NCBI RefSeq assembly: GCF_006345805.1
Contig: NW_021832994.1
Location: forward strand, 1 to 59,352
Reading direction: 5' to 3'
Length of the DNA: 59,352 nt
Source of the DNA: Octopus sinensis
Taxonomy: Eukaryota
In this document: positions 1,335 to 43,046 of the stretch, in pieces
Layout of the letters: every line of letters begins with the position of its first letter
Position numbering within the stretch: position 1 is the stretch's first letter
Notes under the pieces: model-generated
What the model saw: the letters and a program-made list of their open reading frames with translations, nothing else
Database searches by the model: none
What the model was told of the DNA's origin: nothing
Made by a program: the position numbers and the translations under genes

Positions 1335-1640
1335 GTGGCACGTAAAAAGCACCATCCGATCGTGGCTGTTGCCAGCCTCGCCTGGTCCCCATGCCGGTGG
1401 CACGTAAAAAGCACTACCTGACCGTGGCACGTAAAAAGCACCATCTGATCATGACCGTTGCCAGTCTTGCCTGGCCCCCGTGCCAGTGGCACGTAAAAAG
1501 GACCCACTACGCTCACGGAGTGGCTAGCATTAGGAAGGGCATCCAGCCGTAGAAACACTGCCAGATCAGACTGGGCCTGGTGCAGCCATCTGGCTTCACA
1601 GACCCCAGTTGGAAAGCGGACGCTAAATGATGATGATGAT
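1335..1640 (+). mobile_element. RTE 3'-end fragment; similar tails at about 8466-8615(+), 10800-10940(-), 16060-16260(+), 19600-19750(-), 35290-35480(+), 40190-40320(+)
   Basis: GGCACGTAAAAAGCAC...GGAAGGGCATCCAGCCGTAG...CGGACGCTAAATGATGATGATG, the reverse complement of the tails at 11651 and 48135. Confidence 0.8.
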
Positions 1641-2763
1641 GTGTGTGTGTGTGTGTATATATATATATGTATATATATACGTATAGAATAAAAGCACTAA
1701 TAATAACGAAGAAATAAAAGGACATTTTTATCAAAATCCTGATGAATTTTTTCTTAAAATATATATATTTGTATATACGTGTGCATATGAGTGTTTGTAT
1801 ATATATATATATTAGGTGAAAAAAAAATATATATAATATATGTGTGTGTATGTATAAATGTTTATATATATGCATATATGTATGTACGAAGGAGAGCTGA
1901 AAAGTTCCTGGTTTTAAGAGTATTGTGAAAGACCTGGTTGGGGGCCCAGCCTTCCGAGTTCTTTTACAGTGCCTAGAAAAACTGAAGGACTGCTGCAATA
2001 AGCGTGTGAATCTGAGAAGGAAATGTGTTGAATAAAATCATGATTAACAGACCCTCCTGTATTTTCTTTTACCAAAAGCCTGAATCTTTTCTTTACATCC
2101 CAGTATGTATGTATGTATGGATGGATGGATGGATGGATGGATGCATCCATGCATGTATATGTCTTCTCTTTTTATCTTTTACTTGTTTCAGTTATTAGAC
2201 TGGATTTCTAACAACCCTCCACACCAAGCAAACCTAGTGAGGGTGTAGGTTTTTATTCGCTGATGATCTGACCCTGCAACAGGTTGCACTGGATCCTATG
2301 TTACCAATGACATCAAATATATGTATATATAGTAGATGGACTTTAAATGATGATGATGATATATACATATGTGTGTGTGTGTATATATATATGAGCGTTA
2401 GACTATATACCAGAAATCCCTAGTTTGTCGGGTTCGTTCTGCGTCTGCGCAGTGATCTGATTAGTTAGAAAGAGCAAATTATTAGACGCACATGCGTCTA
2501 TCGAGTTGCGCTTCATAATAACAGGAATCTTACTGAAGAGCCTACCTGAGTAAATAAATATTATTTTTATGCTGAACAAGGCGAAACTGCAGTCTAAGAT
2601 GAACAGAGTTAGTAAAGTTTTTATCTTCATTTCACTAAATTTATCTAGCTTCTATGTTTCTAGTACATACTTCGCCCTTAATCTACTATATATGAATAAT
2701 ATATGGCCGGTGCTAGAAACACCAGCGATAATAATTAATTTTATTTTATCGCATTTTGAATTT

Positions 2764-2802
<39 letters not shown>

Positions 2803-38579: not shown

Positions 38580-38710
38580 GTGCTTTTTTCATTCCATATT
38601 TTATATTCTTGATTCTCTGTGGTATACCACTATTCTTCCTGGAAGTATCATTTGCCCAGTTGGTAGCCTTAGTCCTATAGCTATATGGAGAATAAGTCCC
38701 CTATTTAAAG
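38580..38710 (+). CDS. SLC6 transporter coding exon 2 (TM2), with apparent 1-bp deletion
   Basis: TTGCAG acceptor; reads (G)[26 protein letters not shown], then the conserved [16 protein letters not shown](G) continues in a shifted frame; donor GTAAGT at 38711. Length is 131 nt where 132 is needed. Confidence 0.9.
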
Positions 38711-41328: not shown

Positions 41329-41407
41329 AAAATGTTGGTTTCTATTTACCTTTGTGATGTGTGTGTGTATGTATGTGTTTTCTTTTATATTTTTTTTCTT
41401 TTAAATG

Positions 41408-41458
<51 letters not shown>

Positions 41459-41703
41459 TATATATATACACACACATACATACATACATTTATATATATA
41501 TATATATTATATATATATAAATGTATGTATGTATGTATGTGTATATATATATATATACATATATAAATGTATGTATGTATGTGTGTATATATATATATGT
41601 GTATATATATATATATATACACACATTTAAAAGAAAAAAAATAATAAAAGAAAACACATACATACACACACACATCACAAAGGTAAATAGAAACCAACAT
41701 TTT
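41329..41703. repeat. About 375-bp fold-back palindrome centred on (TA)n
   Basis: About 85-bp unique arms (41329-41412 and 41620-41703) are reverse complements differing by about one indel. Confidence 0.88.
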
Positions 41704-42047
41704 TAATTTCTGAATTACTACTACTTGACAGTTTGAGTCCTGGCTGCTCTTTCTAGTGGGTCGAATGGCCTATTAAGGCCATTCCTCAATTGTTGTTGAA
41801 TTTATATATATAGTCTTTGACTATTTTCTTTTTCTCACTAGACCGCTGGTGGTGATAAATTTCTATTGAATTTTTTGCTACCCTATATTGATTAATTGAT
41901 GATTTTCTGACTAATTCTGAAATTGAATCAGCAGTTTATATTTACTGCTGATAAGTTGGCATGAGTACGATGGTTTTGAAAATTTTAGGGCAGATATTCC
42001 TAGGGCATAGACACAGATGCCTCGTGTATATCTGCCCCTTCCTGGCT

Positions 42048-42146
42048 TCTTTACCGATGAGGTGTAGCCTTTGGTGGATTGACTTAATTTAATTTAATTA
42101 AGCTGGTTTGCCATTAAAAACACCGAAACAATGCGTTGTCTAAAGA
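42048..42146 (+). ncRNA. Type-I hammerhead ribozyme candidate, sense to SLC6 intron 2
   Basis: TCTTTA-CCGATGA-GGTGT-(54 nt)-ACACC-GAA-ACAATGCGTTGT-C-TAAAGA: stem I 6 bp, stem II 5 bp basal, near-palindromic stem III, GUC triplet; the only core deviation is U4C. Confidence 0.7.
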
Positions 42147-42379
42147 TGAATTAGGGTAAATGTTTTTAAATTTTCCGTTAATTTCTGAATTACTACTACT
42201 TGGCGGTTTGAATCCTGGCTGCTCTTTCTAGTGGGTCAATTGTTGTTGAATATATATATATACACATACATACATACATACATTTATATATATACACACA
42301 CACACACGCACACAATTTTTCGGTGTGCGGTGGTTAAACATGAAATTGTCAATACAACTGTTGTTGTTGTTGTTTTCAG

Positions 42380-42668
42380 GTATTGGTGTTGGAATGGTTA
42401 TAGTCTCTGGAATTGTGTGCGTCTATTACAATGTTATAATCGCCTGGACATTGTATTACCTTTTCATGTCATTCCGAAGTACTCTTCCTTGGAGTACATG
42501 TGGAAACAGTTGGAATACCAAATACTGCGTCGAAGACGATCACAACAATGCATCCGCACTCAATGGTACCTGGAACGAGAACAGTACCTACTCTATATTC
42601 CAGAATGTCAGTGTAGCCCAAGTTTTTAACCATTCCATGAGAGTATCAGCTAGTGAAGAATATTGGGA
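42380..42668 (+). CDS. SLC6 transporter coding exon 3 (TM3, EL2)
   Basis: TTTCAG acceptor; GIGVGMVIVSGIVCVYYNVIIAWTLYYLFMSFRSTLPWSTCGNSWNTKYC...SASEEYW(E), including the EL2 Cys pair; donor GTAAGT at 42669, phase 2. Confidence 0.95.
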
Positions 42669-42830
42669 GTAAGTACTTGACTGCTTTATATTTGGTGCAT
42701 TTCTGCCATTGCAGGTTTTTCCCCTTTTATGTTTGCTTCCCAACCACATTGTTCTGGGTTCAGTCCCATTGCATGGCACATTGCCTACCAAGTGGATTTG
42801 AGAAACAGAAACTAAAAGAAGCCCATTGTA

Positions 42831-42876
<46 letters not shown>

Positions 42877-43046
42877 GAGAGAGAGAGAGAGAGAGAGATG
42901 TAGGCATGGCTGTGCAGTGAGAAATTTGCTTCCCAATCACATGATTCTGTATTCAATGCATGGCACCTTGGATAAATGTCCTCTACTATAGCCCTGTTCA
43001 CCAAAGTCTTGTAGGTCAATTTGTTTGCTCATCATATTTGTATGTA

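What the first reader, a model, noticed from the sequence alone, without database searches (positions are those of the whole stretch)
42048..42146. Complete type-I hammerhead ribozyme on the sense strand of SLC6 intron 2
Seen: stem I TCTTTA(42048-53)/TAAAGA(42141-46); core CCGATGA (42054-60); stem II GGTGT/ACACC with G10.1-C11.1, closing a 54-nt insert that can itself pair (CTTAAT/ATTAAG plus wobble pairs); GAA; near-palindromic stem III ACAATGCGTTGT; canonical GUC triplet, predicted cut after 42140. The only core deviation is U4C. Established: Penelope-like elements and metazoan retrozymes carry type-I hammerheads with short palindromic stem III, often acting as dimers. Inference: any transcript of this transporter contains a potential self-cleaving RNA about 240 nt upstream of the exon-3 acceptor, which could tune splicing or mRNA yield, or release a linear or circular RNA.
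Basis: partly seen in the sequence, partly recalled or inferred. Interest (0 to 1): 0.8.

Follow-up and report, generated by a model that had tools for sequence, protein, structure and literature searches.

The report
Mutated hammerhead ribozyme in retroelement relic
The hammerhead-ribozyme-shaped sequence is really there in the transporter gene's intron, but it is most likely a mutated leftover of a small ribozyme-carrying mobile element (a canonical hammerhead lies 40 kb upstream), and nothing shows that it regulates the gene.

Summary
The motif at 42048-42146 (+) is exactly as described: three helices, a CUGANGA/GAA core with one deviation (U4C), GUC, predicted cut after 42140, 240 nt before SLC6 exon 3. 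A descriptor this loose matches random sequence about 0.006 times per window, and this is its only hit with stem III of at least 3 bp. No covariance model finds it, though: no Rfam hammerhead family at E<=10, and neither of two models built here. Rfam does find a canonical type-I hammerhead at 2527-2600 (+), 40.1 bits against a threshold of 34. The two share a large AU-rich insert in helix II, a self-complementary helix III, and AAGAUGAA right after the cut site. Both sit in AT-rich, strongly folded blocks of about 370-475 bp bounded by (TA)n microsatellites. The flagged block carries 85-110-bp terminal direct repeats, about 1.2 units. Best reading (about 0.75): a decayed, single-copy, non-autonomous hammerhead retroelement of the retrozyme / Penelope-like kind. 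U4C, a dimer-type helix III with no partner, and a misfolded monomer ground state all predict little or no cleavage. Regulation of SLC6 is unsupported. No other genomic copies or orthologous introns could be reached. This is a new member of a known kind, of low to moderate interest.

The parts
42048..42146 (+). Flagged hammerhead-like motif (HHR2), type-I topology, 99 nt
   Evidence: Read directly. Only descriptor hit with stem III of at least 3 bp. No Rfam or custom covariance-model hit.
42048..42053 (+). Helix I, 5' strand UCUUUA; pairs with 42141-42146
   Evidence: 6 Watson-Crick pairs.
42054..42060 (+). Core C3-A9, reads CCGAUGA; position 4 (42055) is C instead of U
   Evidence: U4C reduces activity in vitro (PMC3088659).
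42061..42124 (+). Helix II: GGUGU 42061-65 / ACACC 42120-24 closing a 54-nt AU-rich insert (42066-42119) that forms a further 10-bp plus 7-bp hairpin
   Evidence: RNAfold minimum-free-energy and centroid structures.
42125..42127 (+). Core G12 A13 A14
42128..42139 (+). Helix III ACAAUGCGUUGU: a 4-bp hairpin, or a 12-bp self-duplex with two G.U pairs in a dimer
   Evidence: The cofold dimer minimum-free-energy structure pairs the two copies over all 12 nt.
42140..42141 (+). C17 and the predicted scissile bond (between 42140 and 42141)
   Evidence: Position in the hammerhead consensus. Inferred, not assayed.
42141..42146 (+). Helix I, 3' strand UAAAGA; with the next 4 nt it shares AAGAUGAA with the canonical hammerhead at 2596-2603
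   Evidence: about 0.16% of random 14-mers do as well.
41703..41812 (+). Upstream copy of the terminal direct repeat, with a 25-nt palindromic insert at 41763-41787
   Evidence: 57/60 and 24/25 identical to 42178-42262.
41813..42177 (+). Single-copy centre of the element, holding the hammerhead and several hairpins (such as 41988-41997 / 42028-42037)
   Evidence: No other copy in the window. The 475-nt unit folds with z = -3.8, 0 of 100 shuffles as stable. GC 0.35.
42178..42262 (+). Downstream copy of the terminal direct repeat; ends in (TA)n that runs into the flanking microsatellite
41406..41680 (.). (TA)n/(TACA)n microsatellite on the left of the element
42250..42316 (.). (TA)n/(CATA)n/(CA)n microsatellite on the right of the element
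42380..42668 (+). SLC6 coding exon 3; the acceptor AG is 42378-79 and the cut site lies 240 nt upstream
   Evidence: Translation. All 40 homologues carry Pfam PF00209.
2527..2600 (+). Canonical type-I hammerhead (HHR1): AUCUUA CUGAAGA GCCU[35 nt]AGGC GAA ACUGCAGU C|UAAGAU, cut after 2594
   Evidence: Rfam RF00163, 40.1 bits against a gathering score of 34, E about 1e-6 for the whole window.
2396..2768 (+). 373-bp AT-rich structured block carrying HHR1, bounded by (TG)n(TA)n and (TA)n
   Evidence: Fold z = -2.7. GC 0.34. No other copy in the window.

Best explanation
The motif is the hammerhead of a small, non-autonomous, ribozyme-carrying retroelement, of the metazoan non-LTR retrozyme / Penelope-like-element kind. 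The element landed in a (TA)n microsatellite inside the SLC6 intron and has since decayed.

In live elements of this kind, tandem or multimeric transcripts are cut by type-I hammerheads. The weak, self-complementary helix III of these ribozymes makes them work as dimers between neighbouring copies. The unit-length RNAs carry 5'-OH and 2',3'-cyclic phosphate ends, are circularised by a tRNA ligase and are copied back into DNA (established for the family: PMC7229834, PMC4209133).

The copy here is about 1.2 units: a 450-475-bp unit with 85-110-bp terminal direct repeats and a single ribozyme. Its ribozyme carries a transition at core position 4 (U4C), has no partner for dimerisation, and has a monomer ground state that is not the active fold. 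I therefore infer that it cleaves the SLC6 pre-mRNA poorly or not at all and is a neutral passenger of the intron.

Shown here: the anatomy, the rarity by chance, the context, and a canonical hammerhead in the same window. Inferred: common descent with that hammerhead, the mode of insertion, and the loss of activity.
For: (1) Descriptor-level match with all three helices, G10.1-C11.1, A15.1-U16.1 and GUC. The chance rate is about 0.006 per window, and none as good appeared in 38 Mb of random sequence.

(2) The same window holds an Rfam-validated type-I hammerhead on the same strand, so this genome carries hammerhead elements.

(3) The two motifs share unusual traits. Both have a large AU-rich insert in helix II (35 and 54 nt). 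Helix I reads AUCUUA/UAAGAU in one and UCUUUA/UAAAGA in the other. Both have UUAC before the core. Helix III is self-complementary in both (ACUGCAGU and ACAAUGCGUUGU). Both have AAGAUGAA straight after the cut (p about 0.002).

(4) The contexts are alike and retrozyme-like. GC is 0.34-0.35. The blocks are 373 and about 475 nt and fold far better than shuffles, z = -2.7 and -3.8. Both 3' ends run into (TA)n. Terminal direct repeats are 81/85 identical. Published retrozymes are 150-450-bp, low-GC, highly self-paired repeats; the mussel ones are 350-390 bp (PMC7229834). Some PLE clades form partial tandems and prefer microsatellite targets, (TA)n for the Naiad clade (PMC8557442).

(5) The dimer ground state is the double hammerhead, -57.5 kcal/mol against -45.8 for two monomers, as described for metazoan type-I motifs (PMC4209133).

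(6) The repeat arms differ by about 4.7%. If they were identical at insertion, one or two substitutions are expected in a 99-nt motif, so a post-insertion U-to-C transition is unremarkable (inference).
Against: No covariance model supports the motif. Rfam Hammerhead_1, _3, _II, HH9 and HH10 give nothing at E<=10 on 136 nt. Two models made from the canonical copy do not retrieve it. Outside the ribozyme the two elements share no detectable sequence. The shared 8-mer was noticed first and tested afterwards. No second copy of either element is in the window, and no other genomic copies could be fetched, so repeat-family status is not shown. No reverse transcriptase or GIY-YIG reading frame was found among the ten largest ORFs. 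The extension of the upstream repeat towards the cut-site equivalent is not significant. Loss of activity is inferred only; a natural U4C hammerhead still supports viroid infectivity (PMC3088659).
Confidence: 0.75

Rival explanations
1. Chance look-alike: an AT-rich intron segment that happens to satisfy a relaxed hammerhead descriptor and has no ribozyme ancestry.
For: Every covariance-model test fails. One core position deviates. The 54-nt insert and the longer helix III are atypical. With two mismatches allowed, the window gives 18 hits against 7-15 in shuffles, so slightly looser criteria are pure noise. At 0.05 hits per Mb a large genome should hold hundreds of chance matches. My descriptors were fitted after the fact.
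Against: The expected count is about 0.006 per window, and 0 at the observed helix quality. A validated hammerhead with the same peculiarities lies in the same window on the same strand. The retroelement-like context and the perfect double-hammerhead dimer fold also argue against chance.
Confidence: 0.12
2. Domesticated intronic ribozyme: the motif self-cleaves nascent SLC6 pre-mRNA 240 nt before the exon-3 acceptor and so tunes splicing or mRNA yield.
For: It sits on the sense strand of an intron close to an acceptor. There is a precedent in conserved intronic type-I hammerheads of amniotes, in RECK, CTCL and DTNB (PMC6155905). U4C can be tolerated in vivo in a viroid (PMC3088659).
Against: No conservation data exist. 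There is no hit to Rfam HH9, HH10 or Hammerhead_1. The core is mutated, no helix I - helix II tertiary contact is evident, and helix I cannot be extended. The monomer ground state is inactive and there is no partner copy for a dimer. The motif lies inside an evident insertion with terminal repeats. In vertebrates retrozymes are depleted from introns, read as selection against genic copies (bioRxiv 10.64898/2026.07.22.740005). The gene copy itself has an apparent frameshift in exon 2.
Confidence: 0.05
3. A still-active copy of a mobile element: the C4 variant is a working subfamily, and the locus contributes self-cleaved RNA to retrozyme or PLE propagation.
For: Metazoan element hammerheads vary greatly within a genome (PMC4209133). 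The helices are intact and the dimer fold is strongly favoured. The terminal repeats differ by only about 5%.
Against: There is only one ribozyme in the locus, so a unit cannot be excised. No own promoter or second copy is evident. U4 is otherwise near-invariant. The canonical copy in the same window has U4.
Confidence: 0.08

Closest known systems
Metazoan non-LTR retrozymes (type-I hammerhead repeats of 150-450 bp expressed as circular RNAs; PMC7229834)
   Same: Type-I hammerhead, low GC (0.35), a unit of about 450-475 bp, highly self-paired RNA, and direct-repeat (more than one unit) architecture. The mollusc examples (mussel, 350-390 bp) likewise lack the classical loop-loop contacts.
   Different: Only about 1.2 units with a single ribozyme instead of a tandem array. 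The core carries U4C. Helix II carries a 54-nt insert. Copy number and RNA circles were not testable.
Hammerheads in the pseudo-LTRs of Penelope-like elements (PMC4209133, PMC8557442)
   Same: A dimer-type, self-complementary helix III and a larger-than-usual helix II. The G10.1-C11.1 pair is kept. The element has a partial-tandem structure and is inserted in a microsatellite.
   Different: No reverse transcriptase / GIY-YIG reading frame lies between the repeats. The repeats do not contain the ribozyme. Helix III is longer than in minimal PLE motifs. The (TA)n target preference was reported for the Naiad clade, which lacks canonical hammerheads.
Rfam Hammerhead_1 (RF00163), as matched at 2527-2600 in this window
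   Same: The same order of elements, the same core apart from position 4, and a 6-bp helix I. The AAGAUGAA tail and an AU-rich helix II insert are shared with that copy.
   Different: The flagged motif scores below E = 10 against RF00163, while the copy at 2527 scores 40.1 bits.
Conserved intronic hammerheads of amniotes (HH9/HH10; RECK, CTCL, DTNB; PMC6155905)
   Same: A type-I hammerhead on the sense strand of an intron of a protein-coding gene, thought to derive from retroelement ribozymes.
   Different: Those have canonical cores and conserved tertiary contacts and are deeply conserved across species. Here the core is mutated, the contacts are absent, and conservation is unknown.
Natural U4C hammerhead variant of a viroid (cited in PMC3088659)
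   Same: The same single core deviation.
   Different: That variant is backed by stabilising tertiary contacts and by infectivity data. No such support exists here.

Membership tests
Hammerhead ribozyme, type I | Three helices in the order I-core-II-GAA-III-H-I, with G10.1-C11.1, A15.1-U16.1 and H17 (not G) | tested here: met
   helix I 6 bp, helix II 5 bp plus extension, helix III 4 bp, GUC.
Hammerhead ribozyme, type I | Invariant core C3 U4 G5 A6 N7 G8 A9 / G12 A13 A14 | tested here: not met
   Position 4 is C (42055); all other core positions match. U4C is a documented but activity-lowering natural variant (PMC3088659).
Hammerhead ribozyme, type I | Score at or above the Rfam RF00163 gathering threshold (34 bits) | tested here: not met
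   No hammerhead-family hit at E<=10 on 2.2 kb or on 136 nt. The copy at 2527-2600 scores 40.1 bits.
Hammerhead ribozyme, type I | Site-specific Mg2+-dependent self-cleavage giving 5'-OH and 2',3'-cyclic phosphate ends | not testable with these tools
   Needs in vitro transcription or end-specific RNA sequencing.
Hammerhead ribozyme, type I | Helix I - helix II tertiary contacts for activity at physiological Mg2+ | tested here: inconclusive
   Helix I is a plain 6-bp open helix that cannot be extended past a U.U mismatch. No recognisable loop partner was seen. Mussel retrozyme hammerheads also lack these contacts (PMC7229834).
Same ribozyme lineage as the window's canonical hammerhead (2527-2600) | Retrieved by a covariance model of that copy | tested here: not met
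   Models R1 and R2, filters off, E<=10: not retrieved.
Same ribozyme lineage as the window's canonical hammerhead (2527-2600) | Shared sequence not demanded by the fold | tested here: inconclusive
   AAGAUGAA after the cut site, p about 0.002 per random 14-mer but tested post hoc. The best local alignment of the two elements puts the 3' halves in register but is not significant.
Non-LTR retrozyme | Unit of 150-450 bp, GC below 45-50%, highly self-paired RNA | tested here: met
   Unit of 450-475 bp, at or just above the published upper limit. GC 0.35. Fold z = -3.8.
Non-LTR retrozyme | Tandem copies, each with its own hammerhead | tested here: not met
   About 1.2 units and one ribozyme; the upstream partial unit starts after the ribozyme position.
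Non-LTR retrozyme | Many dispersed or tandem copies in the genome, and unit-length linear and circular RNAs | not testable with these tools
   The source genome and its relatives are not in the reachable collections.
Penelope-like element | RT (and GIY-YIG EN) reading frame flanked by pseudo-LTRs that carry the hammerhead | tested here: not met
   The 365-bp centre has no long ORF. The ten largest ORFs of the window have no RT or EN domain.
Domesticated intronic hammerhead (HH9/HH10-like) | Conservation of the motif at the orthologous intron across species | not testable with these tools
   The best relatives of exon 3 are 60% identical or less. The one locus fetched (L001) aligns only over the exon.
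Domesticated intronic hammerhead (HH9/HH10-like) | Match to Rfam HH9 (RF02275) or HH10 (RF02277) | tested here: not met

The most novel reading that the evidence does not exclude
The C4 hammerhead is catalytically competent in vivo, for instance as a dimer with transcripts of sister copies or helped by its long helix II, and has been co-opted to cleave nascent SLC6 pre-mRNA upstream of exon 3. That would be the first invertebrate counterpart of the conserved intronic hammerheads of amniotes. It would belong to an undescribed lineage of hammerhead elements marked by a 35-54-nt AU-rich insert in helix II.
Probability: 0.05. Interest if true: 0.65.

Novelty: new member of a known kind. Interest (0 to 1): 0.25.

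Why it matters
Type-I hammerheads carried by retrozymes and Penelope-like elements are already known by the thousands in invertebrate genomes, so one more copy, and a mutated one, changes little. There are three modest points of value. First, this genome evidently hosts hammerhead elements with an unusually large AU-rich insert in helix II, a variant that standard covariance models only partly tolerate. One copy passes Rfam and the other is invisible to it, so censuses based on Rfam would undercount such families. Second, a sense-strand intronic copy with a core mutation fits the reported depletion of intact retrozymes from genes. Third, if the motif did prove active and conserved, it would give a tractable invertebrate case for the open question of what intronic hammerheads do to splicing.

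Tried and rejected
- **Rfam, permissive mode:** run on 2.2 kb and on 136 nt around the motif. No hammerhead hit; only microsatellite 'miRNA' artefacts and a weak snoRNA-like hit.
- **Covariance models from the canonical copy:** one full (R1) and one loop-trimmed (R2), both with filters off. Neither retrieves the flagged motif. A MAFFT alignment of the two hammerheads was out of register, so no joint model was built.
- **Further decayed copies in the window:** a descriptor allowing 2 mismatches and signature-string searches gave only noise. BLAST of either element against the window found no other copy.
- **Orthologous intron or other genomic copies:**
  - The exon-3 peptide search gave only fragments 60% identical or less.
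  - The one locus fetched aligns only over the exon; another look-up failed.
  - Window ORFs are not in the protein collection.
  - DNA pattern scans of metagenome, viral and prokaryote genome collections gave 9, 1 and 89 hits. The nine metagenome hits were inspected and lack helix II. The descriptor scan of the fetched loci found no hammerhead fold at any pattern site.
- **tRNA-derived SINE idea for the direct repeat:** prompted by a T-arm-like GGTTTGAATCC. ARAGORN and Rfam find nothing, so it was dropped.
- **Extension of the upstream repeat back to the cut-site equivalent**, which would have tied the element's 5' end to ribozyme cleavage: not significant.
- **Terminal redundancy in the element at 2396-2768:** none found.
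- **Penelope-like RT/EN remnants among the largest ORFs:** none.
- **Cephalopod hammerheads in the literature:** no description found in the searchable library or in the supplement of PMC7229834.

Full report
**The observation**

The sequence at 42048-42146 (+) reads UCUUUA CCGAUGA GGUGU [54 nt] ACACC GAA ACAAUGCGUUGU C | UAAAGA. Helix I has six Watson-Crick pairs. The seven-base core differs from CUGANGA only by C at position 4. Helix II has five pairs, starting with G10.1-C11.1. GAA follows. Helix III opens with A15.1-U16.1. The triplet GUC precedes the predicted cut after 42140.

RNAfold confirms that the 54-nt insert extends helix II with a 10-bp and a 7-bp stem. The SLC6 gene is on the same strand. 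Coding exon 1 starts at ATG 37336, exon 2 is 38580-38710, and exon 3 is 42380-42668. The cut site therefore lies 240 nt before the exon-3 acceptor, as stated.

**Is it more than chance?**

A descriptor modelled on the motif allowed at most one core mismatch, helices of at least 5, 4 and 3 bp, and a loop 2 of up to 60 nt. It hits only this site on either strand. It hits nothing in 200 dinucleotide-preserving shuffles of the window.

A looser version with helix III of at least 2 bp finds two sites in the window. In 38 Mb of first-order Markov sequence it found 2 hits, none as good as the observed one. That is about 0.006 expected per window.

Two cautions apply. The descriptors were written after the fact. 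The same rate also predicts a few hundred chance matches in a genome of a few gigabases. With two mismatches allowed the signal drowns in noise: 18 hits against 7-15 in shuffles.

**Model-based tests fail**

Rfam reports no hammerhead family for this site at E<=10, either on 2.2 kb or on a 136-nt slice. This is a real negative. It is softened only by the fact that the motif piles up several penalised features: U4C, a 54-nt insert, and a helix III longer than the model's.

**A canonical hammerhead in the same window**

The whole-window Rfam scan at gathering thresholds gave one hit. It is Hammerhead_1 (RF00163) at 2527-2600 (+), 40.1 bits against a threshold of 34, E about 1e-6. The sequence is AUCUUA CUGAAGA GCCU [35 nt] AGGC GAA ACUGCAGU C | UAAGAU.

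This copy has a canonical core and a perfectly palindromic helix III. It matches the published profile of metazoan type-I motifs. That profile is helix I of 6 bp, helix II of 4 bp, and helix III of 1-2 bp capped by a small palindromic loop, active as dimers (PMC4209133). So this genome carries hammerhead elements.

**What the two motifs share**

- Both have a large AU-rich insert in helix II.
- Both have near-identical helix I sequences preceded by UUAC.
- Both have CGAAAC.
- Both have a helix III that pairs with itself. ACAAUGCGUUGU forms 12 pairs with a second copy, two of them G.U.
- Both have AAGAUGAA immediately after the cut. About 0.16% of random 14-mers of this composition do as well, but I noticed the match before testing it.

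Against common descent, single-sequence covariance models of the canonical copy do not retrieve the flagged motif. This holds for the full model and the loop-trimmed one, with filters off. The two elements share nothing detectable outside the ribozyme. The literature stresses extreme sequence variability of element-borne hammerheads within a genome (PMC4209133), so this does not exclude kinship. It leaves kinship unproven.

**Context**

The flagged motif lies in a discrete insertion.

- A direct repeat, 41703-41812 and 42178-42262, is 57/60 plus 24/25 identical. The upstream copy has a 25-nt palindromic insert. The repeat brackets a 365-bp single-copy centre.
- This makes about 1.2 units of a 450-475-bp unit, flanked on both sides by (TA)n/(TACA)n microsatellites.
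- The downstream end falls in an internal (TA)n of the unit.
- The unit has GC 0.35 and folds far better than shuffles: z = -3.8, 0 of 100 shuffles as stable.

The canonical hammerhead sits in a similar block. That block is 373 bp, GC 0.34, z = -2.7, and also lies between microsatellites.

These features match non-LTR retrozymes. Those are 150-450-bp, low-GC, highly self-paired repeats with type-I hammerheads; mussel examples are 350-390 bp and lack the classical loop contacts (PMC7229834). They also match habits reported for Penelope-like elements. Those habits are partial tandems forming pseudo-LTRs and a bias for microsatellite targets, with (TA)n reported for the Naiad clade (PMC8557442). 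[quoted passage not shown]

No RT or endonuclease reading frame was found among the ten largest ORFs of the window. The elements here are therefore non-autonomous.

**Mechanism and likely activity**

For the family, the mechanism is established. Hammerheads cut multimeric transcripts into units. Those with a weak palindromic helix III do so as dimers between neighbouring copies. The units are ligated into circles and reverse-transcribed (PMC7229834, PMC4209133).

For this copy I infer near-inactivity, for four reasons.

- U4C 'considerably decreases activity in vitro', although one viroid tolerates it in vivo (PMC3088659).
- The monomer's lowest-energy fold pairs core bases C4-G8 with the 3' strand of helix III. 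It is 2.1 kcal/mol more stable than the hammerhead-constrained fold.
- The active double-hammerhead fold is the dimer ground state, -57.5 against -45.8 kcal/mol. No second copy exists in the intron or nearby, and the copy 39.5 kb upstream has a different helix III.
- No helix I - helix II tertiary contact is evident.

With a single ribozyme the locus cannot release a unit-length or circular RNA. The 4.7% divergence between the repeat arms would, if they were identical at insertion, predict one or two substitutions within the 99-nt motif. A post-insertion U-to-C transition is then unremarkable (inference).

A fast ribozyme in an intron can either abort co-transcriptional processing or be tolerated through exon tethering. 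I recall this from Fong et al. 2009 and Dye et al. 2006, which were not checked here. Conserved intronic hammerheads do exist in amniotes (PMC6155905).

Nothing found here supports such a role for this motif. In vertebrates retrozymes are depleted from introns, which is read as selection against genic copies (bioRxiv 10.64898/2026.07.22.740005). A mutated copy in an intron fits that picture.

In addition, exon 2 of this gene copy is one nucleotide short of keeping frame between exons 1 and 3, with the shift near 38654-38665. This is either an assembly indel or a pseudogene. If it is a pseudogene, regulation is moot.

**Limits**

I could not reach the source genome, its relatives or any RNA data.

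- The exon-3 peptide finds only fragments 60% identical or less.
- The one locus fetched aligns only over the exon.
- Window ORFs are absent from the protein collection.
- DNA pattern scans of metagenomic, viral and prokaryotic collections returned only hits with no hammerhead fold.
- No cephalopod hammerhead description was found in the library.

**Verdict**

| Reading | Probability |
|---|---|
| Decayed single copy of a hammerhead-carrying non-autonomous retroelement | about 0.75 |
| Chance look-alike | about 0.12 |
| Still-active element copy | about 0.08 |
| Domesticated regulator of SLC6 | about 0.05 |

This is a new member of a known kind. Interest is 0.25.

Noticed in passing
window 2527-2600 (+), element 2396-2768: Canonical type-I hammerhead above the Rfam gathering score (RF00163, 40.1 bits). 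It has a palindromic helix III (ACUGCAGU) and a 35-nt AU-rich loop 2, with the cut predicted after 2594. It sits in a 373-bp structured AT-rich block between microsatellites, about 35 kb upstream of the SLC6 start codon. Whether it lies inside the same transcription unit is unknown.
   Followed up: yes
window 38580-38710 (shift near 38654-38665): SLC6 exon 2 is 131 nt, one short of keeping frame between exon 1 (ends 37504) and exon 3 (starts 42380). [12 protein letters not shown] reads in one frame and [17 protein letters not shown] in the next. This is either an assembly indel or a pseudogenising frameshift.
   Followed up: partly
window 41763-41787: A 25-nt palindromic insert (GAATGGCCT..AGGCCATTC) is present in the upstream copy of the element's direct repeat and absent from the downstream copy.
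   Followed up: no
window 41892-41954 (+): A weak C/D-box snoRNA-like match (SNORD52, 27 bits against a gathering score of 45, E 0.005 on 2.2 kb) lies inside the element. UGAUGA is at 41887-92 and CUGA at 41947-50, but there is no convincing terminal stem. Probably chance.
   Followed up: no
window 41400-41640, 42240-42310, 42820-42880: Dozens of sub-threshold Rfam 'miRNA' hits (mir-3149, mir-297, mir-1277, mir-466 and others) are artefacts of (TA)n/(TACA)n microsatellites folding on themselves.
   Followed up: yes
window 1335-1414 / 1424-1503; 995-1050 / 1058-1113; 1618-1672 / 2338-2392: Three other repeats lie near the canonical hammerhead. One is an 80-nt tandem pair spaced 89 bp apart (88% identical). 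One is a 56-nt inverted repeat with a 7-nt spacer (89%, MITE-like). One is a recurring 'GGAC..TAAATGATGATGATGAT' tail followed by (TG)n(TA)n.
   Followed up: no
L001 10029-10156 (ENA ERZ25073280, contig ctg50803): The closest retrievable relative of exon 3 comes from an unidentified eukaryotic contig: 58% protein identity, and 77% DNA identity over 128 bp. The alignment begins 6 nt before the window's exon-3 start. There is no intron similarity and no hammerhead in 20 kb.
   Followed up: partly
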